Assembly (NCBI RefSeq): GCF_964204645.1
Contig: NC_134030.1
Span: 11,181,947-11,245,946 of the forward strand
DNA: 64,000 nt
From: Tubulanus polymorphus
Taxonomy: Eukaryota; Animalia; Nemertea
Direction of reading: 5' to 3'
Both the position numbers and the translations under genes were made by a program. Positions 19,901 to 52,399 of this stretch are shown here, piece after piece. Position 1 is the first letter of the stretch. Every line of letters begins with the position of its first letter. Under the pieces are notes generated by a model. That model made no database searches and was not told the DNA's origin. It was given only the letters and a program-made list of their open reading frames with translations.

Positions 19901-22900
19901 CATCCCGATGTGGTTCGGGAAAAGATTACGAAAGAACTTAATTTAGGGAGAGTTAGGGGTCTCTTCAGTGACCCATTTATGCCAGATGGTGCTCCGATTC
20001 ATGTTTCGCCCCTCGGCGTCGTGCCTAAAAGCTCGGGGGGTTTAGGGTTATCCATCACCTGTCCTACCCAAAGGGTTCTTCGGTTAACGACTTTGTCCCC
20101 GTGGATGCATCCACCATTAAAAATTCAACTATTCAAGATCAATCGATATAATCAAATCTCTGGGTCCGGACGTTTACCTTGCAAAAACAGATATCGAATC
20201 CGCGTTTCGCATTATCCCCATAAGCGAGTTTGACACCATTGTTGGGCTTTACCTTGGACGGCAAGTTTTATGTTGATGCTGTTTTGTCGATGGGGGCCTC
20301 TAGTTCGTGCGCTATTTTCGATCGTTTCTCGTCTCTTTTAAAGTGGGTAGCTCTTCATAAGTTAGGGTGCTCTTTCGCTGTACATATTCTTGACGATTTT
20401 CTGCTCATTGCAAAAGGCGAGCTCAAGTGCAAGCATGATCTAAACAACTTTCTACGACTATGTCACGAGATAGGTGTGCCCATTAAGCTAGATAAGACGT
20501 TCCCACCCGTTCGCCAGTTAACGTTCGCCGGAATCATGATCGATGCCGTTTTGCGGGAGGCGCGTTTACCTGAAGATAAATTACTCAAATGCCGCACCTT
20601 AGTGGATCAATTTTTAGATAAGTGTAAGGTAACTTTACGCCAATTACAATCGTTGATTGGCACTCTGAACTTTGCATGTGCCGTTATAGTGCCTGGCCGT
20701 CCCTTTCTCCGGAGACTGATTGATCTGACGGTCGGCGTGCCTCATAAGTCATTTCACATTACGCTCACGGCCGAGTCCAAAAAAGATCTCCACGTCTGTC
20801 GTGTTTTTCTCGCAGGCTTCAACGGCAAGTCGTTTTTCATAGACGACAGGAGATTGACTAACGAACGGTTGAACCTTTATACCGACTCGGGGCTATATTT
20901 GGGCCCCATTGGTTCAGTGGCGCCTGGCCGACCAGACGGCCAAAAATTACTCCATTGCAGTTCTAGAGCTGTACCAAATTGTAGCGGCTCTGGCCGTTTG
21001 GGGTGAGCAATGGCAGAATAAGACCATATGTTTTCATTCTGACAATCAAGCGGTTGTTCATGTCATCAATCGTCAGTCTTCACGGGACAGAGCCATGATG
21101 ACCCTTGTCCGGAAAATGGTATCGTAATTTGTTTAAAACGTAACATTGTTTTCCTCAGTGAGCATATACCAGGCCATCTTAATATTCTACCGGACTTCCT
21201 CTCTCGTTTTCAGTACCGCAGATTCCACTGGGCGGCACCGTGGGTCGACTCGGTCCCAACGGAGGTCCCTCGTCCTTGGCTCCCGGCAGGTATAGGCCCA
21301 CTATAGACAAACTGCTGGCTGCTGCGCTTAGTCCAGCTACGACCAGAGCATACGATCGCGCGTGGGGTAGGCTTGCCACTTTCGGTGCTCATTCGGGTAC
21401 CGACATATCTATACCAGTGGCCGCGACCACAATTAACTTATTCATCGCTCACTTGCACGAAACTATCAGCGTCCGCCATATCCTCATCCTTTTCGGCTAT
21501 TTCTTATTTTCATAAAATACGAGGGGCCCCGATCCCTGCAGATCATTTGTAACACAGAAACTAGTAGCGGGCGTGAGGAATTTGTCTCACAACCGCGACG
21601 TCCGATTGCCCATTACTCCCGTCATTATGTCTCGCTTGCTCGGTCATCTTTCTTCGTCGGAGGAGGCCTTGTCCAGTAGCCGCTTAGTGCAGTCAGTTAT
21701 GATCGTGGCATTTTGTGGATATTTTCGCATCGGCGAGTTATTACCCAGGGCTCTTGCCTCAGCGGGGGACGTGATACAGCTTCGAGATGTCACCGTCACG
21801 CCTTCTGGTCTTCAGATTATCGTACGCAAATTCAAACATAGCTCTCGCGTTGGCCCGCAGGTCATTCAGGCCGAATATTTGTCGCTACCCGTAGACATGG
21901 ATTTGGCTCTCATTATCTCGGATTATTTACGTTACAGAGGGCCCTTCCCTGGTCCGCTCTTTATAGATTGTTCCGGTAAGCCGTGGCTGCGCCGTGCGTT
22001 CGAGAGGCGTCTCGCAGTCTTGCTACATGGCTGCAAGCTTTCCACTTCCCTTTACAAGGGCCACTCTTTTCGCATCGGAGCGGCTACCAGCGCAGCAGCC
22101 AGGGGGTCCCCGATGCGCAGATAAGGGCAGCTGGCCGCTGGGGGTCGGAAGCTTACCGCAAGTTTATAAGGCTGTCTAGGTAGTCTCTGTGGGCTCAGCC
22201 ACATATGGGTGGCTGTGTGGCATTTTCTGAGCCCACTTTGGCGTATTAACTCATTAATTAATTAGGTCAAACAGCTAGGGCGTTTGACTTCGTCTTAATA
22301 TTACGTAACTCTGTATTATTCATCTCCATAACTAGGTCAAAACAGCTAGGGCGTTTTGGCCATAATTTTATGATTTTATGTTTATAATATCATTGTCTAA
22401 ATATTAGTTAATAAGTTTGTAATGGTTTTTTGTATACGTCAAAAACAGCTAGGGCGTTTTTGACATTTCTAATTTTTATGTTTTGTATATAATAAACGTC
22501 AAGTAGCTAGGGCGCTTGGCCTTTTCATCATAAACGTCAAGCAGCTAAGGCGCTTGGCCTTTTCATCTTCGGGTCGTTTCTGTTGCAAAAATTTGATTCC
22601 GCGTTCTGTGTTTTCTGTGTGTCCATCTGCCTTATGCGTATAGATCCTAGCGAACATGAACAAATGTGTCGATAAGCCGATCAATATCGACCATTATATT
22701 TCTCTATTTTTAATTTTTTTCAAAGCATATCAATGATGCTGCTGAACAGAAAGCTAATTATTCTGCTTTGCAGGTATAATCAATTTTTTTTCTGTGAATA
22801 GATAAAGTGGTGTTTAGGAACGTCTTGAAAAACCAAAGGTTTAGAATTGGAAACGTAGAACTTGGTTCACACGACAACCAATCGGTAAACAGCATGTTGT

Positions 22901-28900: not shown

Positions 28901-31900
28901 AGATTCAAAGATAATTGGTTTAGAAATTCGACCACTACCACGCGGGTATTTGAGGTTCATCACATTGGTCTTGACGGCAGTAAGAAAACCAGTACATTCG
29001 ATGAACTACCGACGTTGGTTGTGAACAGAAATGAAACTCTCCTCTTTCGGATAATTGTCAGACTTTCCGACAGCATATTTTCCGCCAAAGGTTTTTGGCT
29101 TAGATTAAATGTGACAGAAATAGGTAGGAACTTCAATCCCCGGTGTCGTCGCTTCAGGTATAAACGGAATCGTGGAACCTTCCAATAACGAATCGCTTGG
29201 GCATATGGGTACCGGGAAGTTTAATACACTACTACAGATTCGAACCATAAAGTAATAGACCGGATTTTCAAATAAAAGGCCTTATTCAACAGTCTTTCTC
29301 GTGACGGCATATCACGATGAACCATGTCATTTGACAAGTAATATTGGACTTTCACTATGCCACATTAGTAAGCGTTAGAACTACTTTAAGATAAACTGCT
29401 GTCACGAGGCCAACTATACCGGCTCACACCTGATGGTGGCAAGAGTCGCATAGTGTAGTGTACTTTGCTAATTTCTTTAGCAAATTGACAACACAGAAAT
29501 GAAAGTCCCGCAGCCTTAAAAGACTTCAGGCACCCAAATATCAGGAACTGTGGGTAGTACTACAATTTTCAATAAGGTATGAGGGGATTAAGCTTTCAAA
29601 TCAGAATACAAGCTATATATACTATCTTGCCACGCTAGAGGTGCACGTATACAATTGGTACGGCGGTAGAGTACCGCTATTACAATTCTGATAAAATTCA
29701 AACTGCAGGTAGAGAAAGATTGAGTGAAGACTGCTGTTAGGCATGACTTAAAACCGATTAGAAACATTTTGTACACTAAATAATCTTTGATTATCATTGA
29801 AAGAAATATACCCGAGATATTCCGGATAATACAATTGTTTTGATAGCTTATATTCGACGTTATTGAACTAATTCCGCAGAATCTATATACTTAGTGAAGA
29901 CATCGGTACAAAGAAGGGATGAATCTAACTTTTTACTGAAAATTATGAAATTGTATCCATCATCTTTTCTTTTATCGTATCTTACTTTATTCTTTGAAGA
30001 TTGCCCAGGATACGGATTCTTCGATGGGACTGATTCTTCTATTCGGAAGCTGGAAAAAGAATGTAGTATATTTGCGTCACCGCTGTTCCCGGTCAGGCAT
30101 GGGCGGTCATTATCCATCACATGGCACATCAAACTTAGATTATTTAGTAACTTCATTAAACTTACCTTCTACCAATTCGAATTAAAATCGTCTTCTGGTG
30201 GGTGCGCCGTTAACTACTTGGGCGTTTTACAAATAACAGGCTCCTTTGAACGGTTCTGTAACAACCATTTGCCACCTAGCGCTATTTTCAGTGATTGGCA
30301 TATGTTGACAATCAATATGACTGTTAGCGGATCATCTCCGAGAGGAACGGGATTTTTAGCAAATTACCAATCACTCGCCACTGTATACGATAAATATCTC
30401 GGAGGAAATGAATCAGGCTAGTGAAATGTGACGCAAGCTTTAGCATGTAGTAATGCAAACAGTGACGGAAATTTTATTCACTTAATTAATTAAGATATTG
30501 AAAAGACCATTATTGTGTCTTTCTTTTCTCTCCTAAAGCCATTCATTGGTTATGATTTAAATGAACGTCTAAATTTTTTCACATACATGATCATTCGTAT
30601 TTTTATCCGCAATTCGTATATGTTAACTTCATCGGTCTCTCTCATTGTAGCATCCAAATGTGAATCAAATTGGGTGTACCATGACGGCAATTGTTTGGGT
30701 CTACGGTCGGCTAATGAGAGCTCGTTTTTGAAGATTTTTGCTGCCAACAGACTTTGTGAAGCGGAAGGTGGTTTTCTTGCAAGCATTAAAAATGCAGACG
30801 AGGCTAAAACAATTCACTTCATCCTGATTTCCAACTTTCGGGGTCGGAAAACTCTGAGAAAAGTCTATATTGGTGATGACAAATGATTTCCATTTCTGGT
30901 TTTTTTCGTTATGGGTAACTATGTGTATAAATCCATCTTTAACCTTTATCCCATTATTCCATTTAGGTTTGTATGATAAAACTAACACTCGAGACTTCCA
31001 ATGGCTTGACAATAGTGCAGTAGGATTTACAGCATGGTGAGTTTATTCAGCAGCGTTTTTGTTTTAACACACTTGGTTCGCGTACTTCAATAATCACTAA
31101 ACATAATTTCCAAATTATAAGATTCTTTAATTCTATTATGAGCCACAACTAACAGCCATTTTCAGATGGAATAATCACAAATTAGTAGAATTTATCAAAT
31201 CTAATGTGTATTACAATTCAAAATTGTTATGATATCACTATCATCTAATCTTTACACATTATTTCATATTTCGTCCACAACAACTGGTCTTTAGGGCCAT
31301 GGGGCAGCCTGATGGAGGAGCATTAGAGAGGTGTGTCTATTTAGATCAAAGGTCACTGAAACCTGATGTGTCCCGGTCAAATTGGTTCGATTTTCCGTGT
31401 GGTCGACCGACTACGAATCACTATATTTGCAAGAAACCGAGCGCAAGATTACCATCAGATGAAAGAGGTAAAAAGATTCTCGATCATTTGGGTAAAGACA
31501 TTTCCTACAAAATTTCTATGACATACTTCCAACGTCTTTAGAGCGTATGTTCAATTGGACGCAGCTTCTAACGATGCCGTCAGGTAACGATTCCATGTGC
31601 GCTGATTATGGATTGGTTCCATGTAAGAATGGAGAATGTATACACAAAACTGACGTTTGTAATGGTATCGAAAATTGTCGAGATTCATCGGATGAAACAA
31701 ATTGCGGTAATTATAGTAACAGTTTGTGCTAACATTCTAATAAATATATCGATAATAATATAGGTAATAATAAAAATAATAATGGTGATAATGTTATGTC
31801 GGAGTTGTGGCGATGTCGCTGTCAAAATACATATAAACGTACTATAGATAACATAATAACGAGATTCTATTCATTACCGTTAGAAAGTAGCAACCACGCT

Positions 31901-34900
31901 GTGAATTTTTCCAAAGGCATTTCTTCACTATCAAACACGCTTATTTCGGAAGACTTAAATCCGGATATCGATCAAATCAGGGTATTGATAATCATCTGTC
32001 CAATCAAATATGATTTTTATTCGGATTTCCCATAAACTGGATTAATTCTATTGGTCCCAAAACATCCGATCGCCAATGATCGGGTGAGTTATGTAGCAGT
32101 AGGGGACGATTGTCGTATAAAGAGAAAATAAGGTTTTCAATTTCACACATTTTGCATTGCTCAATAGGTACCAATACTTCGTGATGATTTCCAAAATTAA
32201 TTCAATGATGTGATCTTTAGTCCATCCAAATAGTATATATACCTGCTTATTTTCTTGAATCGAAGTATTTTTCGTCATCAATGTTTCAGCAACACACTGT
32301 CCTGGAAATAGGTTTCAATGTGGTAACGGGCGATGCATATCCTTATCATACCTGTGTGATTTCAGAAACGACTGTGGGGATGGATCTGATGAATCATTTT
32401 GTCGTTAAGTCTTTATTTTCGTTAAATGATTAAAATTTCCGATGATAACAGAAACAGCTAATGTTTTCAATGATTGACAATGAAACATAATTCATAATGA
32501 ATTCAAGAAAATCGCTGAAATATTTTGCTATTTGATATTGTAGATCACCCAGCGTGTAATGCTGCAGAGTACGAGTGTCAAAGTGGCCAATGCATCCCAA
32601 ATATGAAACATTATGACCACGTAACGGACTGTATCGATGGATCAGATGAGGTACCCGATACAGGTAACATCACTCGACACCGAATGAAATTTCTCTTAAA
32701 TGAACTGTTACCAAAAGTATTCCAATCACTTGAGTAACAGGAAAAAATTGACCCAAAAGTGACGCCTTAATGAATAATTGTGACATATTTCCGATAATGA
32801 CAAGCGTAATATTAATAATATAACATTAGTGATCAAGTTATTTAGATTTCCATATATCGCAATTGAATCGAATTGACCAGCAACCATGATTCTAGCCTGA
32901 ATTGAGACGTATTGCAATAAGTCATGAAATTCAGTTTCAAATACACAATTGTAACGGCATAATACACAAAATGTAAGGGTCAAGCTGCTAGAGTACGAAA
33001 CGACGAAATTGCGAGATATGAAACGGAATTACGAAATGCAAAACGAAATTACGAAATATTAATTTTTTTGCGAGTAGTGCTTAAGTACGTGAAACGAAAT
33101 AAGAAACAAATGGTCATATTTCAAACACGACCATACTATAGTCACAGCTCGCGATGACGCCACGGGACTGTCCAAAGTTGGGCGGTACAAGTAAATGATC
33201 TTTTGAAAGTATTCAGGAATTCTATCTTCTTAAACTGAAAGGTGTTTAGCCTATTGACATTTTGAGACGGTCACAAAGTTGATATGATAAATTATACATC
33301 GGAATCTATAGTGTGTGGTCGTTATTTCATTTCATCCATCGTGGATCAAACAATATGATTTGCTTTAAGGAACCAGAAAGTCACCTGATAGCGTGAATTC
33401 AAAGTGAGCGTTTCCAGGAAATCAATAATGAAGCCTAAGCCTAAAAAATGAATATCTTGTTTCTCCGCCGCGGCCAGGTCATTTTGTAAATTCCTATAAA
33501 ATGTTTTGATCTGGTCATTTCTATAGCTGCCGGGTCTGTTATTGTATGCCTGATCATTGAAAAAAGTAATGTACAGGGCGGAGGTGGCCGACCGACCCAC
33601 ATTTTAAGCTCAGCAGAGTGGAGCAACAAGCTTTGGGTATCATTATTTAGCCTAAACACAGCAGGATGTGTTTGCACACTTCGTTCCCTAACCCGTAATT
33701 TATTGATCGGTTCCTTCAAGTTATATGAGCATGCGTAGATCATTTTCCCCTCACAGGGATTCGAACCTGCTGATATCGCTAAACTCGGCCAAGGCGTTGA
33801 ACCCCGCCATATTAGACCGATTGCGTATGTTTAATTAAGCCAGCTGCATGAGTCTGCCAATTTCGTTTCGAACATGTATTCCATTTCACAATTTAGCAGG
33901 ACACGCGAAAGAATGGCCATTTCGTTTCGTACTTCAGCATTTCGTTATTTCGTTTCATATTTCGTTTTTTTCGGTTTTTTCTTTCGTAGAATGCAACGGG
34001 TTCCAGTGTTACGATGGATCGTGTCATCCGTCCGCTTGGAAATGTGACGTAACGTTAGATTGTTCGGGTGCATTTCGAGAAGATGAAACCGGTTGTACTA
34101 AACGTAAGCGAAATACCGGACCGTGCTTTCATGGAACATATTCTGGCGTGGAAACTTTCCACTAATGATCGATTACCAAGTGATTCAATTACCGTCTTTC
34201 ATCGTTTGTTTTCGAGGAATACCGCAAGATGGATTCACTGAATGCGCCAACGGTTTCGTTTACAACTCTTCGCAAAACTGTATGTACGACTTGGATCAAT
34301 ACGGATATTCAACACCATGTCGGGATTATTCACATCTCATTGACTGCGGTAATAAAAAACCTCTTGCCACTCTAATCGTCCATTAGATCTTCTTAATTAT
34401 AACATGGAATTTGAAAATGCAATCATATCACATCAACGGCTGGTGAGATAATGTCGAAAAAATTAAATGAATTTTGCTTTATTTCATATGCTGCGTTGTC
34501 TGTCCAGTTTTATCCGCTTCGTTTGGTCCCATTTACTTACATGTAGTGCAAATAAGGGCTACAGTTATTCTTGCAACCAATAATACTTCTTGAAAAGAAT
34601 ACACATAACTTTTTTGTATGGTATAAAACCCGTCGGAGATCATACAGATTTGATACCGAGATTGCGTAAATGTTATAGCAAGTTTTATGTTTTAATCAAT
34701 GAATAAGACCTATCTCTACTTTCAGCACGTTTTATTTGTCCACCTGGCTATTTCAAATGTTCTACTAGCTACTGTATCGCAGCAAAGTTCGTTTGCAATG
34801 GACAACCAGAATGTCCTAACAAAGAGGATGAACACAACTGTGGTATGCCGTCATCTATGATGAGATGCGAAAATCTACCAACAGACAAGTGAATCACAAA

Positions 34901-37619
34901 ATATCTTTATTTCTTTGATTTACAGACACATACGTATGCCCTGGTATGTACAGATGTTCTTCGACAAAACAGTGTGTGCCTCTGAACGAAGTGTGTGACA
35001 GGATAAATCAGTGTCCGAGCAACGATGACGAACGATTTTGCGACATGGAAATTCCTAGTCCCTGTATCGGGTACGGTTATTCCTTGTCTTGTCATTCAAT
35101 GGAACAAAGCCATCTACCACCCAACGGCAATTACTTTGTCGCCAGGTCGATTGGTTTATTCAACAATACACAGTTGAGTCTAAACTCCGCTACATTTCGT
35201 TCGTTCACTTATTTGACTTACCTCGACCTAAGGTTGTGCGGTGTGAAAGAAATATCGACGGGAATCGTATCATATTTACTTAATCTTCTTTTTCTTGATC
35301 TTCGTGATAATCCGTTGGTGATTATTCAAGTCAATAGTTTGAGTCTTGCAAATCTTCGATCTGTCCAGCTCTACGGGAATAAAATCCTTTCCACAATAGA
35401 ACATGGCACATTTTCGAACACATCCGCTCTGGAAAAACTCGATCTGCACGGAACAAACCTTACTGTTCTAACATCAGGTATGTTTCTAGGACTCTCATCA
35501 GTAAAATCATTGAATCTCAGTGGCAGCAATCTTGTTGAAATACAGGATGGTGCATTTGAAGGTCTCGGCAATGTATCGCATTTGGATATATCTAACAATG
35601 ACATACAGACATTTAGCAGTGTGATTTTCATTGAACTTAGATCTCTGAGTTATTTACGAAGTGATCATTATAAGTTCTGCTGTATGGCTGAAGGTGTCTT
35701 GGAAGCTAACTGTTACCCTCCAAAAAATATATTTTCATCTTGCTCTGATTTGATGAGCAGCTACGTCTTACGGGTTAGCCTGTGGATCGTTGGGACCGTA
35801 GCTCTAGTAGGAAATCTCGTAGCTGTACTGATTCGCTTTTGTTACGATCCGTTGTTGTCAGCAAATGGTCGATTAACTCTAAGTCTTGCGCTATCAGACT
35901 TCGCGATGGGTATGTATATGTACGTTATCGCTAGCGCCGATACTTACTTTCGTGGTACCTACATCATACACGATGAAAAGTGGAGAAATGGAGCATTGTG
36001 CAAGTTTGCAGGATTTCTCGCGACATTATCTAGTGAAGTATCCATGATAATGTTGTTAATCATGTCTTTAGACAGATTCGTGGCAGTCGTATTTCCTTTC
36101 TCCCAATTGAAACTGACACCTAGACGGGCTTCAATTTGCATCTTTTTTACGTGGTTGTCTGGTTTTGTCATTGCTGTTTTGCCTCTTCTACCCATTCAAT
36201 ACTTCGACAAATTCTACTCGCGTTCTGGAGTGTGCTTGTCTCTACATCTAACGTCTGAAAAGCGTCCTGGTTGGGAGTATGCTGTTGCGGTGTTTATTGG
36301 ATTAAACTGCGTGGGGTTCATTGTTATAGCCGCGTGTTACGTATGCATGTACAACGTTATATCTAGATCTAGCCAAAAAAGACACCAAATGAAGTCCCAA
36401 GTTACAGAAGTAGCTGTCGCAAGAAAGATGATGTTAATAATACTCACAGATTTCTGTGCTTGGATGCCGATAATCATACTAGGTAGGTGCGGCATCATAG
36501 CACAGGTTATTCACGTCACTTAAGTTATACATGTTGTGCAGTTGTTCTTCGTGCAGCTTGAACTTATCGAATGTCATTCTAAGGCTACATAGCTGCACCT
36601 TTAATGCTTCTTATTTAAATTTTAGGAACGCTTGCAGTTAGTGGTCAGGTTACGATTCCGGGTGACGTTTACGCATGGATAGCCGTATTTGTATTGCCGA
36701 TAAACAGTGCTATTAATCCCTTGCTGTACACCATAGCAGGCTACAGATCTATGTAAGTCGTCTTGCAATAAAAAATACCTTTGATCAAGATAGCCAGATT
36801 ACATTGCATTGGAATATGTAAACCGACTGCGAATGTATTATCTTTTCAGTAGAGAAAATGCAAGAAAACGGAAGTTCGATGCACTACGTAAGTTTTCGAT
36901 TCAATAAATCAATTCTTAGTACAATTTATCCATAATCGTAGACATTATAGATGTAAGATTTAAGAGATCCAACGAATCCGTGCCATGCCATGTCTTTTTC
37001 AGAAAACGACCTTAGAGATGGAAGTACTAAAGATGTAACACTTTTGTTACCGAATGTTCTACCCATAGTTAGTCATGAGAACCTGAGTCATTTGTCAACA
37101 TTATCGTCGTTCTTTCGCAACGAGAGAAATGTGGATCTACGCACGGCACTTATTATACTGCGCCGACTCGCAAATGCGATACATGAAATCCATTCTAGAG
37201 ATATGTCTCTGAAAACGCTAGACGTAAACATAATACTTGTCGGAAATAAAAAGGTAGACACATTTTCCACAATATGTACGCCTATCTGTAAAAAGTAATT
37301 AAATAGCTTTAGGGCTGCAGCAACTACATTGTATGTTTTACTCATCCTGATTCCACATCCAAGAGGAAACCAGTTTAATTCCCCTCCCCCATCCAGTACC
37401 GTAGCAAACAAATATTTATGAAGTCACCCCTAAATCTATGAATCAATGGCAGAATTTTCTATCGTGTTTCAGAACACTCATGATGGCAAACTGGACGTTT
37501 TTCTCACCACTGATAGGGTACACGGGTTAAACGGCATTGCAGAAGATATCTTACAGTTTGGTAAAATTGTGCTGTTTATTTTGCGTAAAATGAGTACTTT
37601 CAAGAAACGAATGGAGTAG
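4640..37619 (+). CDS. GRL101: Giant multi-exon GRL101-like LDLa/LRR GPCR (type C LGR) with mosaic ectodomain and kinase-like tail; 5' end not located
   Basis: About 35 same-strand exons with canonical acceptors/donors and compatible phases (mostly phase 1 between domains), running to a TAG at 37617-37619. The link between 30000 and 37619 is strong. The link to exons upstream of 30000 is inferred from phase only. Confidence 0.7.
5986..6653 (+). CDS. Exons 5986-6224 and 6563-6653: MAM-like domain
   Basis: [21 protein letters not shown] joined in phase 0 to [20 protein letters not shown]; IAIDDI..C is the MAM C-terminal signature. Confidence 0.7.
6766..7278 (+). CDS. Exons 6766-6975 and 7111-7278: divergent C-type lectin domain 1
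   Basis: [39 protein letters not shown]. Confidence 0.75.
7458..8127. mobile_element. MITE with AAAAATGTCCC(GG) subterminal repeats
   Basis: GGTAAAAATGTCCCGGGA.. / ..TCCCGGGACATTTTTACC TIRs; inverted homologous copy at 55448-55998. Confidence 0.8.
9559..10281 (+). CDS. Exons 9559-9753 (unassigned), 9830-10141 (kringle domain 2) and 10243-10281 (possible linker)
   Basis: [53 protein letters not shown] is a canonical six-Cys kringle. Confidence 0.85.
10955..11513 (+). CDS. Exons 10955-11073, 11163-11289 and 11403-11513: C-type lectin domain 2
   Basis: [49 protein letters not shown]; phases compatible. Confidence 0.8.
12163..13043. mobile_element. Intronic TIR element (GGG..CCC termini, Harbinger/ISL2EU-like)
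   Basis: GGGTCTGTCTAAAGAACATACGTCTAACTGCCC matches the reverse complement of GGGCGGTTAGAGGTATGTGCTTTAGACAGACCC; TSD unclear. Confidence 0.7.
14225..14527. repeat. Tandem repeat, ~61-bp unit, about 5 copies
   Basis: Repeats of CCAATGTGTTTGGACAAATT..TTTTGATTGCCCACTTCGGTGGTCGGAT. Confidence 0.9.
15674..16670 (+). CDS. Exons 15674-16270 (unassigned ~199-aa domain) and 16455-16670 (F-type-lectin/galactose-binding-like half domain)
   Basis: Long stop-free frames between tttcag acceptors and G|GT donors; second exon ends in [15 protein letters not shown]. Confidence 0.6.
17590..18232 (+). pseudogene. SGNH/GDSL hydrolase (esterase) ORF of the retrotransposon, frameshifted near 17970-18010
   Basis: Blocks [17 protein letters not shown] and DGVHL. 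Confidence 0.85.
18957..19758 (+). pseudogene. Gag-like ORF with CCCH/CCHC zinc fingers, frameshifted near 19190
   Basis: [23 protein letters not shown] and [29 protein letters not shown]. Confidence 0.8.
19730..21300 (+). pseudogene. Reverse transcriptase-RNase H, several frameshifts
   Basis: [53 protein letters not shown] and HSDNQAVV spread over ORFs 19583, 20230 and 20909. Confidence 0.9.
21290..22183 (+). pseudogene. Tyrosine recombinase, frameshifted
   Basis: [45 protein letters not shown]. Confidence 0.9.
22802..23332 (+). CDS. Exons 22802-22957 and 23102-23332: F-type-lectin/discoidin-fold domain
   Basis: [25 protein letters not shown]. Confidence 0.7.
23610..27976 (+). CDS. Exons 23610-23761, 25146-25298 and 27817-27976: FA58C/discoidin domain
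   Basis: [21 protein letters not shown]|[17 protein letters not shown]; phase-0 joins. Confidence 0.8.
23835..24953. mobile_element. Intronic MITE with ~110-bp TIRs (hAT-like CGGTGTT termini) and an internal ~77-bp tandem duplication (24183-24340)
   Basis: CGGTGTTCTCATATCGTGGAATGACGGAATCGCGGAATTTT matches the reverse complement of AAAATTCCGCGATTCCGTGATTCAGCGATATGTCAACACCG. Confidence 0.8.
26693..27318. mobile_element. Foldback MITE with ~200-bp TIRs
   Basis: 26693-26900 is the approximate reverse complement of 27132-27318. Confidence 0.85.
28316..30416 (+). CDS. Exons 28316-28452 and 28898-29123 (divergent CUB) and 30000-30416 (CUB)
   Basis: [21 protein letters not shown]; [39 protein letters not shown]. 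Confidence 0.8.
30651..31467 (+). CDS. Exons 30651-30872, 30967-31036 and 31295-31467: C-type lectin domain 3 with QPD motif
   Basis: [57 protein letters not shown]. Confidence 0.9.
31542..34842 (+). CDS. Six single-exon LDLa repeats (31542-31706, 32290-32403, 32544-32663, 33990-34103, 34217-34348, 34726-34842)
   Basis: C..F.C.NG.CI....CD...DC.DGSDE..C patterns; one is the GRL101-type variant CMYDLD..G...CRDYSHL..C; all phase 1-1. Confidence 0.9.
32994..33988. mobile_element. Degenerate inverted-repeat element with (ACGAAAT)n ends and a tRNA-derived SINE-like fragment (about 33740-33830, - strand)
   Basis: ACGAAA-rich left arm versus TTTCGT-rich right arm; GGTTCGAATCCC B-box on the - strand. 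Confidence 0.5.
34926..36752 (+). CDS. GRL101: Exons 34926-36482 and 36626-36752: LDLa7, LRRs, hinge and rhodopsin-class 7TM of a GRL101/RXFP-like receptor
   Basis: LxxLxLxxN repeats; type C LGR hinge KFCC..CYPP..SSCSDLM; SLDRF in TM3, TDFCAWMP in TM6, [13 protein letters not shown] in TM7. Confidence 0.95.
36850..37619 (+). CDS. Exons 36850-36887, 37003-37253 and 37473-37619: cytoplasmic tail with kinase C-lobe-like (pseudokinase) segment, then stop
   Basis: In-phase splice chain from TM7; [45 protein letters not shown]. Confidence 0.7.
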
Positions 37620-38015: not shown

Positions 38016-38955
38016 ACTAGGGGTCCAGGGACACCATGCCCACTTGGGAAGTGGTTTCAGACGCCCTATCCAATGACCTTGAAAAATCCAATGACCTTGA
38101 AACTAACCACGATCATAGAACATGTCAGCAGCTACAATTTTGTAATTGAATGTGGTAACAAAATATGCCTAGTTACCAATATGATATGGAAATATGAAGT
38201 AATGCTACTATTCAACGACCCCTGGTGACCAAATGCAAAGCCCAAGCCCTTGCAACTCACCATAATCATAGAACATGTCATGAGCTACAACTTTGTAATT
38301 GATCGTGGTATCAAAATATGCCTAGGTACCAGCAATAATAAGGAAATACTAAATCATTCTACTATTCAACACCCTTTGTGACCATGTGCGAAGCCCAATG
38401 ACCTTGAAATTCACCATAATCATAGAACATGTTATCAGCTACAACTTTGCAATTGATCATGGTAAGAAAATAGGTATAGGTACCAATACAATAAGGAAAT
38501 AATAACTAAGTTATTCTACAATTCAATGCCCCCTGGTGGCCATATACAAAAACCAATGACCTTGAAACTCACCACGATCATAGACCATGTCATGAGCTAC
38601 AACTTTCCAATTGATTATGGTAGCAAAATGTGCATAGGTACGAATATAATATAGAAATACCAAATTATTGTATTGTTCAACGCCCCATTTGTTTGGCCAT
38701 ATACAAAAACCAATGACCTTGGGCCCTTAATAGATACAAATATATACGAACGATCGAGGTAATTGATAGAAGCATCTTCAAATTTCCCTCGAAAACTTCA
38801 AAAATGTGTAAGAAGTGCTGATTTTGGCGAACAACAATGGCTGCCAGTCGGCCATCTTGAATCTGACAGGGCCAGTTTTTGGCCTGAAGATGTGTCTAGG
38901 GTAGATACACGTATAAACCAAATTGAGACATTACCTTGAAGCGTCTTCAAAACTT
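38016..38955 (-). mobile_element. Helentron-associated non-autonomous element (HINE/DINE-1-like) with ~155-bp internal tandem repeats
   Basis: ACTAGGGGTCCAGGGACACCATGCCCACTTGGGA end and about 4 internal repeats; same family at 5170-5290, 41575-41825, 42690-46294 and 59843-60402. Confidence 0.75.
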
Positions 38956-41574
38956 TGTAACTCTCACGAACTATCTAGATGGTTATCTCTCGACCTCAAT
39001 AGCTTCAAGACCCATCTCAAAACAACTTTGTTCCATGCAGCATACCATTAACTCTCGGAAAGCGAATTGGATTTAACATTTTTTGGCAGAATAAAATTTG
39101 ATTGAATTTGTAATTCGAGCACATGGCTAATTAGCATATCAAGGTCATACACCCGATTTGGGAAAAGCTATTTTTTCGCGAACCTTGCGCAATTCTCAAG
39201 GGTGAATTTTCTGTAGAGCAAATAAAAATTCCTCCCAAACACCAAATCAACTAAAGATTTCATAGAAATCGATCTTGAAATACAATTTTAAATCTTAAAA
39301 TAAAACCCGGAAGTAAACAGTAGACGATACCGCGGGTTCACGTGAACACCTGATTTCTGTAAACGAAATGTTGGTTGTGACAAAATTGTTCAGACGGTTT
39401 CAGGTGGTAATTAGTACGGAAACGTAACGACCATGGTCGACTTATTCGATGAAATCAGGCCTATGTGATATCCAAATTTTGACTTTTTTATTCTCCAGAC
39501 CTCCCTGATACAGAAATAAAAAATTTTGGTGGTACGAAAGTGCAATCACAGCGCCGACGGCGACAGAGCCGTGTCAGAGATCGGCGGAGTGAAAATTGAG
39601 GTGGACGAACACGAAGAAGTAGGCTATTGTGCTACTTGAATCGATAAAACTCCTGGCGCGACCCCGACGCTTTTCGTTGATTAAGTAATACAAATATCAT
39701 GCAATGGGTTTTCACAATCTACCGCCGGTACGTATTTACCGGATTTCAATATCACTCCAAAATTCAAAGAAACCTCGAAATATCGAACCGGAACACTTCC
39801 GGTAGATATCCGCGGCTGCCCAACCGGGAAACTTATTTGTTTGAATAGATATTGATAGGATCCATCATCTTCACCCGTCAAGGGATTCGAACCCACCAGA
39901 ATCGGGTCGGGCCAATCACAGCTCTTGTAACAAACCACATTAGGCTTCTGTGGAATTTCCCAGTAAATGGGCCAATCAGCGAACACGTAGCGAACGCGGA
40001 AGTATTGTCGCGTGTTGATACATGACGTCATGCGCAAAAGCGCCAGTAATGAAATCACGATAATTCACGTGAACAGCTGCTGATATTTTCAGATAAACCA
40101 ATCACAGGGAAGACACAACTTCTTGATTGGCTGATAAAAATTGAAATTTTCCCGATTTAATTTTCGTGAAAAATGCAGAAAACATTTTTATGAAACCCTA
40201 TTTCAAAATTCTGCTCGCTACGATTCCGAGAATGGATTACGCTTAAATACGTGATTTGTTCGAATATGCCCTCACTTGGCAAGCAAAATGGCCTTTTGTG
40301 TGGAAACCATGTCATTTTAATTCGCTCCATTTGTAAAGCAATAGGCTCAGCCTACGGCTGGCCTAAAATGAGTAGGAGGCCATTCAAAGTTAAAACGTTT
40401 TTAGTTAGTTCTCTTGAGACAGACTTCAAGTGGATTTAGGGGTTAGACTAGTCCTTCCCTTCAGAATTTGAATGTGCCCGCCAAAAAAGTATTTGAATAG
40501 ATTTTCTAAGCAAAAATAAATGCAAATGGCATAAACATACCCCTTTCGGTCCTATATAAACGAAGGGCCAAAAGAACCCCACCAATGTTGCCCTTGCACT
40601 TAGACAACCTTAAAATAATAAAAGTAGTCACGAAGTAATAATGGCAAGTTGAGTAAAATATTTACTAAACAAATTTTATAAGGATATGATCTGTAGTCAA
40701 AATTTGACATTTAATGTGTGTCTGCCAGATGATGTTTCTTCTAGGCTGTTTATACCCTAAAAATAATAAATTTTTATACAAGTCCCCCTAGACAACAATT
40801 ATTTCAGAGTCTATAAAACATGAATACTTGAATGTACAATCTAATGGCATAGCTGGCTTCAGTTTTTAAAAAAATCATTCGATAAAACGGCATATTTTTA
40901 CTTAAAAATAATCAAAAAAGTTTTGGGGCCAAAAAATTGGAATTTGTTGTCAGGTTTGTTTAAACATGTGCGCGATGCACGTGGTTATATCATTGTTTAC
41001 ATCTGACGTGATCGGCATATCGCAAGCCCCGCCCCACGTATCAATCAAATGGTGCATGGGCAAAATGTTAAAAGAACCCTACTAAAAAACTATGCAGTGT
41101 TACAATCGTTAAGGCGTGCGTGAATGTTGAGCGGACCATTGCGATAATTTTCAACGCTGTGAACATATCAGAGGGCCCCTGTGTACTCACACGGAATTAA
41201 CTTAAGTCACCATATGTTGACACTCACCTTTAGACTGCATACGAGCCTCTAAAGTTAACATCCACGATATAACGATTTTAAGAATGGCGCTTCTGTCAAT
41301 CATCACTACACCCTACGTCATCAGCAACACGTGATGCGTGATGTCAAGTAAACGGCGTGAAGAGCATTTTTCCAGGAGGGCACGGCAAAAATTTCCCAAC
41401 TCTCTTAAACCAAATTTAATCCCAACTTGAAGACACCATTTCTAATGCGAAATGTGTGGAAATGTCTAACTTAAGTGGCTTTAAAACGACCTAAAACGTC
41501 TGTCAACAAAATCGGAAGTGCGTCATCAACCGGCAAACCGATCACATAAGGACGTTCGTCTAACGAACGTCCTA

Positions 41575-41825
41575 GAAACGTGTAAAAAGTGCTGATTTTG
41601 GAGAAAAACAATGGCTGCCATTGATTCTGACAGGACCAGTTTTTGGGCTGAAGATGTGTCAAGGGTAGATACATGTGTTACCCAAATATCAAGTCATTAC
41701 ATTGAAGCGTCTTCAAAACTTCCCAAAATAACTGGAGTCCGTCTACGGACGGACGGACGAACGAATGGACGAAGGACGAAAAGTGAACGCAATAGCCCGC
41801 TGTGACTGAAGTCCCAAGTGGGCTA
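41575..41825 (-). mobile_element. HINE terminal fragment
   Basis: (GGAC)n microsatellite followed by a TAGCCC..GGGCTA hairpin. Confidence 0.75.
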
Positions 41826-42689
41826 GAAAACATTAAGATTCAATCAAAAGTCAAGAAAATTATAATTTGCAGAGACTCCTCACTCGAAAATATTTTCTCG
41901 CTATGAAACAAGCCGAATCTGAATAATTAAAAAGTTTATTTAACCATTTCCTTTATGTATTCAAAGATTGAAATTTCTAATTGTATTTAATCAACCTAAC
42001 GACCTATATAGGCCTGAAGGTGTATATTCACTACTTCTACGTAATGTAGTTGGCACCGTTACATTTTGACATCAAAAGCGGAAAACAATAAATCACCAAG
42101 ATTATCGTACGATTTCACGTGCGACGTTGAATCCGTTATTACCACAGTTTGAATTGATTTGAATGATCCGATGCGTAGGCAGTATACTTGTTAATTAATG
42201 GAAGCATGATTTTAGATGAATTTACAAATAGTTCAATAACATCATTCAAAGCGCAAAATCCCTTGCTTCACGAAAAGACCATTGATTATTGTATTATTGA
42301 AGTCTCCTCCGCAACTCCGGATCTGGAAAAACCAAAAAGCAATTTAAAAACAACTTACTCCATTAAGCCAATACGGAAATTATTATGTATTCGAATTATC
42401 TTTCCCTGATTTTCGATGTCGGAATAAAATGTATGCATTAACTACTAGATGGATTTTAGATGACATGCTTTACAATTCGCAATCGCACTCACTCTTCACC
42501 CATCACCCTACCTGCTTGTGTTAATTGTGGTAAACCGTCCACTTCATTTTTGCAGAATTCAACGGCTAAAAGGATAGACAATATATATGCACAATTAGCG
42601 TTACTCTTTATACAACAAACTGCTAGAAAATCTAACTTACTTATTTCGCGTAATATCTCCTCGAACTTCTTGCCTGAAATCGAGAACAA

Positions 42690-45600
42690 ACTAGGGGTCC
42701 AGGGACACCATGCCCACTTGGGAAGTGGTTTCAAATGCTCAAAAATTGTAATATTCAACGCCCCCTGGTGACCATATACAAAACCAATGACCTTGAAACT
42801 AACCACAATCATAGAACATGTCAGCAGCTACGATTTTGTAATTGATTGTGATAACAAAATATGCCTCGTTACCAATTTAATATGCAAATACAAAGTTATT
42901 CTACTATTCAACGCCCCCTGGTGACCATATTCAAAACCCAATGTCCTTGACATGTCATGAGCTACAACTTTGCAATTGGTCATGGTAACAAAATTTGCCT
43001 AGGTACCAATATAATAAGGAAATACTAAGTTATTCTATTATTCAACGCCCCCTAGTGGCCATATAAAATAACTTATGTCCTTGAAACTCACCACAATCAT
43101 AGACGATGTCATGAGCTACAACTTTGCAATTGATTAAACTAACAAAATATGCATTGGTACAAATATAATATAGAAATACTAAGATATTGTATTATTCAAC
43201 GCCCCCAGGTGGCAATATACAAAAGCCAATGAACTCGAAACTCACCACAATCATAGAACACGTCATAAGCTACAAATTTCTTATTCATTATGGTTACAAA
43301 ATATGCTTAGGCATCAATGTAATGTCGAAAAACTTTTTCCCACCTACGAATGAGTACTGATGACACCAAGATGGCCGCCAATTGCGTCATAATTGGCTGA
43401 TCAAAAATACCTATCCCAGGTATAAAACATCCCTTTCCAAAGAATACCCATCAGCAATTGCAATGAGAAATAGCAGAGCATTAGGAAGGTACATGACTCA
43501 GAATTCGGGCCAAAATTGACATTTTTGGGCACTTAAATGGTCATAGGACGGCCATCTTGAGTCCGATCGACCCAATTTTTGTTGTGCTGATGGGCCCTGG
43601 GGGGGGGGGGGGGGTTCAAGTATATACGAAAGAGCAATTACCTTATATGTGTTTTTGAACTTTTTGAAGGAAATTTTGAAGAAGCTTTGATCAAAGCTTC
43701 TTCAAAATTTCCCTCAAAAAGTTCAAAAACATGTAACTAGGGGTCCAGGGACACCATGCCCACTTGGAAAGTGGTTTCAAATGCTCAACAATATAACAAT
43801 TTCAACATTCAACGCCCCCTGGTGACCATTTACAAAAAACAATGACCTTGAAACTCACCACAATCATAGAACATGTCAACAGCTACGATTTTGTAATTGA
43901 TTGTGATAACAAAATATGCCTCGTTACCAATTTAATATGGAAATACTAAGTCATTCTACTATTCAACGCCCCTGGTGACCATATTCAAAACCCAATGACC
44001 TCGAAACTCACCACAATCATAGAACATGTCATGAACTACAACTTTGCAATTGATCATGGTAACAAAATATGCCTAGGTATCAATATAATTAGGAAATACT
44101 AAGTTATTCTACTATTCAACGCCCCCTGGTGACCATATAGAAAAACTTATGTCCTTAAAACTCGCAACAATCATAGATGATGTCATGAGCTACAACTTTG
44201 CAATTGATTAAACTAACAAAATATGCATTGGTACAAATATAATATAGAAATACTAAGATATTGTATTATTCAACGCCCCCAGGTGGCAATATACAAAAGC
44301 CAATGAACTCGAAACTCACCACAATCATAGAACACGTCATAAGCTACAAATTTCTTATTCATTATGGTTACAAAATATGCTTAGGTATCAATGTAATGTC
44401 GAAAAACTTTTTCCCACCTACGAATGAGTACTGATGACACCAAGATGGCCGCCAATTGCGTCATAATTGGCTGATCAAAAATACCTATCCCAGGTATAAA
44501 ACATCCCTTTCCAAAGAATACCCATCAGCAATTGCAATGAGAAATAGCAGAGCATTAGGAAGGTACATGACTCAGAATTCGGGCCAAAATTGACATTTTT
44601 GGGCACTTAAATGGTCATAGGACGGCCATCTTGAGTCCGATCGACCCAATTTTTGTTGTGCTGATGGGCCCTGGGGGGGGGGGGGGTTCAAGTATATACG
44701 AAAGAGCAATTACCTTATATGTGTTTTTGAACTTTTTGAAGGAAATTTTGAAGAAGCTTTGATCAAAGCTTCTTCAAAATTTCCCTCAAAAAGTTCAAAA
44801 ACATGTAACTAGGGGTCCAGGGACACCATGCCCACTTGGAAAGTGGTTTCAAATGCTCAACAATATAACAATTTCAACATTCAACGCCCCCTGGTGACCA
44901 TTTACAAAAAACAATGACCTTGAAACTCACCACAATCATAGAACATGTCAACAGCTACGATTTTGTAATTGATTGTGATAACAAAATATGCCTCGTTACC
45001 AATTTAATATGGAAATACTAAGTCATTCTACTATTCAACGCCCCTGGTGACCATATTCAAAACCCAATGACCTCGAAACTCACCACAATCATAGAACATG
45101 TCATGAACTACAACTTTGCAATTGATCATGGTAACAAAATATGCCTAGGTATCAATATAATTAGGAAATACTAAGTTATTCTACTATTCAACGCCCCCTG
45201 GTGACCATATAGAAAAACTTATGTCCTTAAAACTCGCAACAATCATAGATGATGTCATGAGCTACAACTTTCCAATTGATTGTGGTTACAAAATATGCAT
45301 AGGTACGAATATAATAAAGAAATGCTAAGATATTGTATTATTCAACGCCCCCTGGTGGCCATATACGAAATCCAATTACCTTGAAACTCACCACAATCAT
45401 AGAACACGTTATGAGCTACAACTTTCTAATCGATTGTGGTATCAAAATACGCTTAGGTATCAATATAATGTGGAAAAACTTTTTCCCACTTACGAAAGAG
45501 TACTGGTGACACCAAGATGGTCGCCAATTGCGTCATAATTGGCTGATGAAAAATACCTGTCTCAGTTATAAAACATCCCTTTCCAAAGAATACCAATCAC

Positions 45601-50170: not shown

Positions 50171-50623
50171 ACCTTTTTACCAATATCTCATATCTCATGT
50201 TTTGTGACTTTCTCAAAATGCATCAAAAATTGAACTAATTTTTGGTTCATAAGTCTTCAAATATTCATAAATGAACAGTTGATAGACATCGTGCGCATGC
50301 GCGAAGGGGAAAGGCTGTCTGCTAACAGCTCCGATCAATTTCGGATTTTTGGACCGTAAAACTAGCTAACGGACTGTGTATTCACTACATATTATCAGAT
50401 TCGGCCCAAGGAACCATCAGAAATTGCTGAAGCGCTGCGACAACGTAAATTGGTTGCATTTGCAGTAGTTTTAAGTCGGTTAGAGACGTTGATTTTGACA
50501 CTTGGCAACACGTGTGTTTACACCGGAAGTAAACAAACCAGCGCTCACAGAAATCCATACGCAGAGGAAATAGGACAACTTCATTTCATTATTAACTGAC
50601 AAGTTAGCCGTTTGAAACCAACT

Positions 50624-52218
50624 ATGATGGCTTCGGGATTAAACGAAGGGAATAAGTATTCAATACGTAATAATGAAGCTAACGAAACGAACAGTATTGA
50701 CGAAATAAACATTTTGGATGTTTCAAGTAGCAACCAGGTGGTGCTAGCGTCGATTCGCGAAAACCAGGAAAACTCTAAAAATTCACGTAGGACATCGCTA
50801 GCACTGGAGCTATCAAATCATCAGGACGCGGCAGGTACATCGAATGTTTACTATTGTTCACCTACTAACACCACTACTAACAACACATCCCCCAGTACCG
50901 TTGTTACTAATACACTACTAAATCCGACTCACGACGACTGGCCCGATGATAACAACAGAAATGAAGAGTGGCAGGATGACTGGAGATCCGAGGGGGACGA
51001 TAGCTCTGATCCCGAACACTTGACCACGCCAAAATTGAAGAATCAACAGAGAGTCAAATATCACCTCTCCGGTTCCTCACGTACTAGACAGTTCATCAGA
51101 CCGCAGCAAGGGATATCATCTACATCAGCTAGTTTCAGTAGACCAACATATCTGGCAGCTGAATCGGATACACCGATAGGGTTCTCCCCGATAACTAAGA
51201 TAAGAATATCCAAAAACACTTCAAACATGCCAGAAAACAGTATGGATATTGAGATCGGGCCCCATAAAGGAGACAAACCCATCCAGCAAGCTAGTAAAAA
51301 AAGGAAGATGAATATATGTCTATCTTGTGGGGACAGTGGACGCAATATCAGTTGTTCGATATGTCAAGGCAACTGGTGCGAAACCTGCGTCAGAACGATG
51401 TACGAAGATTTTGACCTGAAAAATTTGATGTGCTTCATCTGCAAGCCATGCAAGGAGGATCTTCCTAACCTAAGCAGAACAAGAAATGAGTTTAGTCCTG
51501 AAATTACCGGTACTCATAGTTTCTCACCGGAGGACTTAGCTTGCATGAAAGATATTTTCAAAGCTGGAATCAAAGAGGTTGCCGATCAAAAAGTAGACAA
51601 GGACGACTTCAAGCAACTTCTAACTGAATTCAGTAAGCTCAACACAAAGGTTGAAACGATGAGCACAAACCTTGAAAAGTCTGGGACCAAGAGGATACAG
51701 GAAATTGAAGAGAAAGTAACACAAAATATAGAAAGCGATATTTGTGATATAACCGATAGTATCCTGGAGTCAAGACAGAGACGTACCCACCTGATCCTGT
51801 ACAACGTCCCCGAATGCAATGACCCGGACTGGAAAGTTAGATTAAAAACAGATAGTGATGCTGTCGAACGATTTCTCACTATTACTCTGGGAGCATCAGT
51901 CGAAAAACCAAAGCACCTGATGAGATTGGGATCCCAACGTACAGACGGGTCAGACAGACCTCTTAGAGTAATATTGAATACGGAATGGGAAAAAGATTCA
52001 TGCTTAGATCGCTATCTCAACAAACTTCGATAAAATAGGGATACTTTAGGAAATATCAGAATGAGCGAAAATAAATCAAAACTAGAAATGAAAAAGTACA
52101 AGATACTACGTGACGAACTCCAAAGAAGACAGCAAAATGGGGAGAAAAACTTGACAATCAGAAATTACCGAATAGTTGAACAACGAGCCAACAACAGGAG
52201 AGATAACAGCTTTCGATA
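50624..52218 (+). pseudogene. LINE ORF1: PHD-like finger, coiled coil and RRM-like region; premature stop at 52031-52033
   Basis: CLSC..CSIC...WCETC..CKPC; RRTHLILYNVPE..RLG..RPLRVIL; frame continues after the TAA (ELQRRQQNGEKNLTIR). Confidence 0.8.
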
Positions 52219-52399
52219 AAAGGGATGTAGACCAACAGCCAATCAAAGTTTGCATCCCAGAAAACACCAGAAAAATTTACAAAAATCAGGACGATCAAAA
52301 AACGCATGAAACGAAAACTGAAAAAATTCATAAAATTCGAGATAATAAATTCCAAGTAATCGAACGGAACTCCAATCAAAACGCCAGTCGACAAATTCA

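What the first reader, a model, noticed from the sequence alone, without database searches (positions are those of the whole stretch)
36850..37619. GPCR cytoplasmic tail resembles a catalytically dead, minimal kinase C-lobe (KIND-like)
Seen: after NPLLYT, three in-phase exons give ..[92 protein letters not shown]. By eye this aligns to kinase alphaD, alphaE (LAxAxxxxHS), a degenerate catalytic loop (HRDLKxxNILV becomes [11 protein letters not shown]), beta8 and alphaF (DVWSFG becomes DILQFG). The N-lobe, DFG and activation segment are absent. Inference: a GPCR-pseudokinase fusion whose remnant acts as a built-in interaction scaffold, comparable to KIND domains. Folded domains on rhodopsin-class C-tails are rare in animals.
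Basis: partly seen in the sequence, partly recalled or inferred. Interest (0 to 1): 0.8.

Follow-up and report, generated by a model that had tools for sequence, protein, structure and literature searches.

The report
Kinase-derived mini-domain on a GPCR tail
A ribbon-worm cell-surface receptor (a G-protein-coupled receptor) ends in a small, enzymatically dead piece of a protein kinase; the same piece sits on related receptors in mites, spiders, molluscs and an acorn worm, so it looks like an old, apparently undescribed built-in docking module.

Summary
Confirmed and extended. The three tail exons (36850-36887, 37003-37253, 37473-37619) are GT-AG and in frame, with identical phases in three paralogues, and are under purifying selection. 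They encode a ~100-aa module that also follows NPxxY in GRL101-like receptors of chelicerates, gastropods, bivalves and a hemichordate. One intron inside it is shared with abalone, scallop, spider and sea urchin. A profile of 24 non-nemertean tails finds only protein kinases among its 60 listed PDB hits (best E 1e-9). An orthologous tail folds confidently (pLDDT 86), and its top 50 structural matches are all kinases (Z up to 11.8). It keeps hinge, alphaD, alphaE, beta7-8 and alphaF. It lacks the N-lobe, the catalytic Asp (0/29), about 25 residues of activation segment, and alphaG-I. The outer face of alphaF has turned polar, as expected of a stable stand-alone module. It is not a KIND member (no PF16474 match, half the size). 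I found no description in the papers searched. A docking or regulatory role is inferred, not shown. No RNA evidence for this locus. Earlier scan notes cover this genome's large GRL101-like family, not this tail.

The parts
30000..30417 (+). CUB domain exon of the ectodomain (exon ends approximate)
   Evidence: Pfam CUB E 2.9e-6
30651..31468 (+). C-type-lectin-like domain over three exons (about 30651-30873, 30968-31018, 31299-31468)
   Evidence: Read by eye from cysteine and IG/W motifs; Pfam blank exon by exon; tail-bearing orthologues carry Lectin_C here
31543..34843 (+). LDLa repeat exons (about 31543-31707, 32291-32404, 32545-32664, 33992-34350, 34727-34843)
   Evidence: Pfam Ldl_recept_a E 1e-13 to 2e-5
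34925..36482 (+). Large exon: last LDLa, LRRs, TM1-TM6 (DRF at 36071, CAWMP at 36455)
   Evidence: Pfam 7tm_1 E 2.7e-25, LRR_8 E 6e-22; motifs
36626..36752 (+). TM7 exon with NPLLY
36850..36887 (+). 38-nt linker exon, basic (5 K/R in 12 residues)
   Evidence: small exon at the same place in paralogues, abalone and scallop
37003..37253 (+). Tail exon 2: linker, hinge/alphaD (about 37101-37118), alphaE (about 37137-37196, invariant His 37191), dead catalytic loop (LKT 37209-37217 in place of HRD), beta7 (about 37233-37241)
   Evidence: motif register from profile-to-kinase alignments
37473..37619 (+). Tail exon 3: beta8 (about 37491-37508), short loop in place of the activation segment, alphaF (Asp at 37545, Gly at 37560), stop TAG

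Best explanation
The gene is a CUB/lectin/LDLa/LRR GRL101-like (type C2 LGR) receptor whose C-terminus carries an autonomously folding ~100-residue module derived from the core of a protein-kinase C-lobe (hinge, alphaD, alphaE, catalytic-loop backbone, beta7-8, alphaF). Shown: homology to kinases, loss of catalytic residues, conservation on related receptors in chelicerates, molluscs, nemerteans and a hemichordate, and purifying selection. Inferred: a kinase or pseudokinase gene was fused behind the 7TM once, in or before the bilaterian ancestor, and then trimmed and re-surfaced. Inferred mechanism: the module hangs on a flexible linker after helix 8, cannot bind ATP productively or transfer phosphate, and acts as a protein-docking module that recruits a cytoplasmic partner to the receptor alongside normal G-protein coupling (DRF, CWxP and NPxxY are intact).
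For: Profile of 24 non-nemertean tails: all 60 listed PDB hits are kinases, VRK3 E 1.2e-9, TYK2 9e-7, BRAF 2e-5. AlphaFold model of the Saccoglossus tail: pLDDT 85.9; top 50 of 48,161 chains all kinases, Z 8.8-11.8, e.g. TNNI3K Z 10.8, rmsd 2.6 over 92 residues. In the limpet 7TM-plus-tail model the module has pLDDT 85-95 and the linker 52-65. Catalytic Asp 0/29, catalytic Asn 9/29; structural residues kept: alphaD Leu 29/29, alphaE His 29/29, alphaF Asp and Gly 28/29. Outward alphaF positions are polar or charged where BRAF has Y, A, I, Y. Phase-0 intron after beta7 shared with abalone, scallop, spider and sea urchin. Tail dN 0.26-0.55 against dS 0.97 to saturated. Two contiguous ORFs join 7TM and tail without introns. 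NPxxY-to-match distance varies from 37 to 121 residues.
Against: No partner, binding surface or assay is known. The tail evolves about twice as fast as the 7TM and is degenerate or absent in several lineages (Lineus, the large tandem family). The structures are of orthologues, not of this protein. RefSeq models of the C10/C60 paralogue end before the tail exons. No RNA reads for this locus.
Confidence: 0.58

Rival explanations
1. Same origin and fold, but the module works in cis or in oligomers: it packs on the receptor's own cytoplasmic face (damping G-protein, GRK or arrestin access) or dimerises receptors through its long alphaF, as kinase-homology domains regulate receptor guanylyl cyclases (from memory).
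For: Covalent tether long enough to fold back; amphipathic alphaF extended by a conserved MLRxY motif; no conserved acidic patch like the one KIND uses was recognised.
Against: Linker length is very variable. The 7TM-plus-tail model gives pTM only 0.64 and a low-confidence linker, so no fixed packing is predicted.
Confidence: 0.25
2. The module is real in other species, but at this locus the mRNA mostly ends before it (retention of the first tail intron gives a stop one codon later, with AATAAA at 36767), so the tail is a minor isoform or unused.
For: Stop right after the donor and AATAAA at 36767 and 36903; RefSeq models of the C10/C60 paralogue stop 17 residues from the NPxxY Asn.
Against: Open frames, GT-AG sites and phases kept in four paralogues whose synonymous sites are near saturation; dN/dS about 0.2-0.4.
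Confidence: 0.08
3. A folded but functionless relic kept only because an unfolded tail is harmful.
For: Faster evolution than the 7TM; repeated loss or decay in paralogues.
Against: Retention in protostomes and a hemichordate, although simple truncation is available and occurs; a re-surfaced alphaF.
Confidence: 0.06
4. The kinase likeness is convergent or chance (an alpha-alpha-beta-beta-alpha unit).
For: Single tails score below Pfam's cut-off (best E 1.8e-6 among 30); Foldseek E-values only 5e-3 or weaker; window exons are blank in Pfam and PDB.
Against: Profile, language-model and structure searches all return only kinases, with correct order and spacing from alphaD to beta7.
Confidence: 0.03

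Closest known systems
KIND domain (Pfam PF16474; Spir, KNDC1)
   Same: Kinase C-lobe-derived, non-catalytic, no N-lobe; KIND of SPIRE binds the formin FSI motif (PMC11231147), the kind of role inferred here.
   Different: KIND model is 197 positions and runs on past alphaF; this module is about 100 residues and ends about 20 residues after the alphaF Asp. No profile match either way. KIND is on cytoplasmic proteins, not on a GPCR. Probably an independent origin.
GPCR-TK, GPCR-TKL/K and other 7TM-kinase fusions (PMC12716839)
   Same: 7TM followed by a C-terminal kinase-derived domain.
   Different: Those carry Pfam-detectable kinase domains and are reported from choanoflagellates, sponges, oomycetes and amoebozoans; the paper finds GPCR-TKs in no other metazoans. 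This is a rhodopsin-class LGR in Bilateria with a dead half C-lobe.
GRL101-like / type C2 LGRs with lectin domains (PMC12297450, PMC6573481, bioRxiv 10.1101/2021.04.15.440029)
   Same: Multiple LDLa, LRRs, 7tm_1, with CUB and lectin modules in front.
   Different: The passages read do not mention an intracellular domain; PMC4079206 sets LGR C-tails aside as poorly conserved. The tail-less GRL101 group (snails, mites, barnacle, tardigrade, this genome's C8 gene) forms a separate clade (96/89).
Pseudokinases VRK3, TYK2 JH2, KSR; RAF-type kinases
   Same: Best sequence matches; G at the HRD Arg position in 25/29 tails, as in the HGN loop of VRK3.
   Different: These keep a whole bilobal domain. 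The donor family cannot be assigned from this remnant.

Membership tests
KIND domain (PF16474) | Match to the KIND profile | tested here: not met
   PF16474 hits one gene on C3 only, none of the tails; tail profile against that gene's exons: probability under 1%; Pfam scan of 30 tails lists no KIND
KIND domain (PF16474) | About 190 residues, with C-lobe helices beyond alphaF | tested here: not met
   Stop 23 residues after the alphaF Asp here; 18-39 residues in most orthologues; model ends with alphaF
KIND domain (PF16474) | Kinase C-lobe origin without N-lobe or catalytic residues | tested here: met
KIND domain (PF16474) | Binds a protein partner | not testable with these tools
   needs pull-down or proximity labelling
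Pseudokinase | Kinase fold lacking VAIK Lys, HRD Asp and/or DFG Asp | tested here: met
   No N-lobe; HRD is LKT here, Asp 0/29; no DFG here, though D/E closes beta8 in 18/24 orthologues
Pseudokinase | Complete bilobal kinase domain | tested here: not met
   About 100 residues; aligned 92 of 268 in TNNI3K
GRL101-like type C2 LGR | Several LDLa repeats, LRRs and rhodopsin-class 7TM | tested here: met
Tail-less GRL101 clade (probable LGR5 orthologues) | 7TM groups with the snail/mite/barnacle GRL101 clade | tested here: not met
   Window gene groups with nemertean paralogues and Lineus (96/96); that clade holds this genome's C8 gene instead
GPCR-TK / TKL / K fusions | C-terminal kinase domain above Pfam cut-off | tested here: not met
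   Window exons blank; no listed match reached the curated cut-off in the tails shown

The most novel reading that the evidence does not exclude
An undescribed domain family: a re-surfaced, self-folding half of a kinase C-lobe that has sat on one branch of rhodopsin-class LGRs since the bilaterian ancestor and gives these orphan receptors a second, G-protein-independent output through a dedicated partner.
Probability: 0.45. Interest if true: 0.82.

Novelty: new variant of a known kind. Interest (0 to 1): 0.7.

Why it matters
A 2025 survey (PMC12716839) finds GPCR-kinase fusions among animals only in sponges, and LGR C-tails have been set aside as poorly conserved (PMC4079206). This module suggests that bilaterians carry such a fusion in a reduced form that Pfam misses. 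It is also a natural experiment in how small a kinase fold can become and still fold, and a second case, apart from KIND, of a C-lobe turned into a non-catalytic module. It gives a testable handle on orphan GRL101-like receptors, a family linked to chemosensation and schistosome resistance in snails (PMC6573481, PMC12297450) and present in ticks and mites.

Tried and rejected
Pfam and PDB sequence searches with single window exons: blank. Word search with the abalone tail: only two abalone proteins. The joined spliced model was not sent to any search or fold; structures are of database orthologues (Saccoglossus P0103, Patella P0081). Alignment A3 held one non-GPCR row (P0131) and some rows with no 7TM seen; the clean alignment A5 gave the same result, and the second model used an alignment without P0131. 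'DFG' strings in abalone and scallop tails lie in alphaF (DIxDFG), not in the DFG motif. The 7TM tree does not show one clade of tail-bearers: deep branches are unresolved and truncated or tail-less rows are nested inside, so single origin rests on homology and the shared intron. Donor kinase family not resolved. InterPro/SUPERFAMILY and CDD labels could not be checked and may already flag some members as kinase-like; subscription papers were not searched.

Full report
Setting. The window lies on contig C6 of a 268-Mb animal genome. The gene runs on the + strand: CUB, a lectin-like domain (by eye), several LDLa repeats, LRRs and a rhodopsin-class 7TM, a GRL101-like type C2 LGR. DRF, CAWMP and NPLLY are intact.

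Observation. After the TM7 exon (36626-36752) come three exons, 36850-36887, 37003-37253 and 37473-37619, all GT-AG, phases 2, 1, 0, ending in TAG 157 residues after the NPxxY Asn. Searching the genome with each exon found the same tail behind three other genes (C10 with its C60 copy, and two on C7), 36-55% identical. These have the same three introns in the same phases. Across the four, tail dN is 0.26-0.55 while dS is 0.97 to saturated; the 7TM has dN 0.12-0.20 between the distant pairs. Two older paralogues (C3, C1) carry more degenerate tails. Three sampled genes with large single-frame 7TM exons, and the C8 gene, showed no match to the tail. So about six genes out of at least 150 scored GRL101-like 7TMs have it (lower bounds).

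Distribution. Relatives found through the 7TM already showed the tail in abalone and in two environmental contigs where 7TM and tail form one uninterrupted ORF. One large profile search, run because Pfam and the word search left the tail open, gave 97 hits; most top hits have a GRL101-like 7TM, with NPxxY 37-121 residues upstream and the module near the C-terminus. Named members come from mites, a tick, spiders, a sea spider, abalones, a limpet, scallops, an oyster and Saccoglossus. A sea-urchin tail scores weakly (E 9e-6) and Lineus tails are truncated. Full-length members share CUB, LDLa, LRR and 7TM, often with a lectin domain. A phase-0 intron just after beta7 is shared by this gene, abalone, scallop, spider and sea urchin; the phase-1 intron before the module is shared with abalone and scallop. 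In the 7TM tree the tail-less GRL101 group is a separate clade (96/89), while the tail-bearers fall in several well-supported groups with unresolved links. One ancient fusion with many losses is the simplest reading; it is inferred.

Identity of the module. A profile of 24 non-nemertean tails returns only protein kinases among the 60 PDB hits listed (VRK3 E 1.2e-9, TYK2 9e-7, BRAF 2e-5). The same profile ranks the two window exons top of 1208 six-frame segments. The window exon alone returns kinase clusters in the ESM Atlas. AlphaFold on the Saccoglossus tail gives pLDDT 85.9 with strand-helix-helix-strand-strand-long helix. All top 50 structural matches are kinases, Z 8.8-11.8, for example TNNI3K residues 543-689 at rmsd 2.6. 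A limpet 7TM-plus-tail model shows the same unit at pLDDT 85-95 behind a low-confidence linker.

What is kept and lost. Kept: the alphaD Leu and alphaE His (29/29), beta7 hydrophobics, and the alphaF Asp and Gly (28/29) with the following Leu and Met/Leu. By general kinase knowledge these are the C-lobe's structural core. Lost: the N-lobe; the catalytic Asp (0/29; Thr here); the catalytic Asn in most (9/29; Ile here); about 25 residues of activation segment (His-to-Asp spacing 42-52, 45 here, against 70 in BRAF); and alphaG-alphaI. An acidic residue closes beta8 in 18/24 orthologues and may be the DFG Asp remnant; the register is uncertain. In intact kinases alphaF is buried all round; here positions 2, 3, 9, 10 and 13 after the Asp are mostly polar or charged. 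This fits adaptation to life without the missing helices rather than decay. The window protein itself keeps Leu and Phe at positions 9 and 10, so it shows this less clearly than its orthologues.

How it most likely works. Catalysis is excluded by anatomy. A folded unit on a flexible tether, kept under selection in distant phyla, most likely docks a cytoplasmic partner (0.58). It may instead regulate its own receptor or dimerise it (0.25). A mostly tail-less transcript at this locus (0.08), a pure relic (0.06) or chance likeness (0.03) are less likely. No step of the function is shown.

Comparison with what is known. It may work like KIND but is not one: PF16474 finds only the genome's own KIND gene, profile comparisons are blank, and it is half the size. 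GPCR-kinase fusions are described for choanoflagellates, sponges, oomycetes and amoebozoans, with none reported in other metazoans (PMC12716839). The GRL101 passages read discuss ectodomains only. Nine literature searches found no description of this tail; closed-access papers and InterPro labels were not checked.

Limits. The spliced model was searched exon by exon and the joined step left out; folds are of orthologues.

Verdict. A real, well-supported and apparently undescribed kinase-derived mini-domain on a bilaterian GPCR subfamily; function inferred. New variant of a known kind; interest 0.70.

Noticed in passing
G000:C7:19447354-19451829 (L004, L005): Two tail-bearing paralogues face each other tail to tail; their 7TM exons are nearly identical (dS 0.08) while the tail exons are far apart (dS 0.97), suggesting gene conversion limited to the 7TM exon.
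   Followed up: partly
window 36753-36772; paralogues L002, L004, L005: Read-through of the first tail intron meets a stop within a few codons in this gene and both C7 genes, with AATAAA at 36767 here: a tail-less isoform is possible. RefSeq models of the C10/C60 gene end at a short alternative exon and miss the tail.
   Followed up: partly
P0131 / L024: A protein from a sequencing run with one hydrophobic segment followed by a similar dead C-lobe piece that seems to keep alphaH; no 7TM seen. Possibly a separate reduced pseudokinase.
   Followed up: no
L026 (G000:C5:5782500-5784500): A multi-exon KSR/RAF-like pseudokinase (HRD replaced by MGT) that is among the best kinase matches to the tail profile in this genome; a candidate relative of the donor.
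   Followed up: partly
L025 (G000:C10:8114000-8116000): An intronless 363-residue kinase frame with HND in the catalytic loop, also on C36; family not determined.
   Followed up: no
P0064, P0069, P0072, P0074, P0078, P0079: A group of unnamed orthologues has a long acidic insert at the beta7-beta8 turn, where other species have the conserved intron.
   Followed up: no
window 38088-45480: Several arrays of a 153-154-bp tandem repeat begin about 470 bp after the stop codon.
   Followed up: no
window 19436-22121, 50600-55230, 62236-63717: Long frames that look like retroelement genes (reverse transcriptase and recombinase-like; LINE-like); the last matches an endonuclease-RT family.
   Followed up: no
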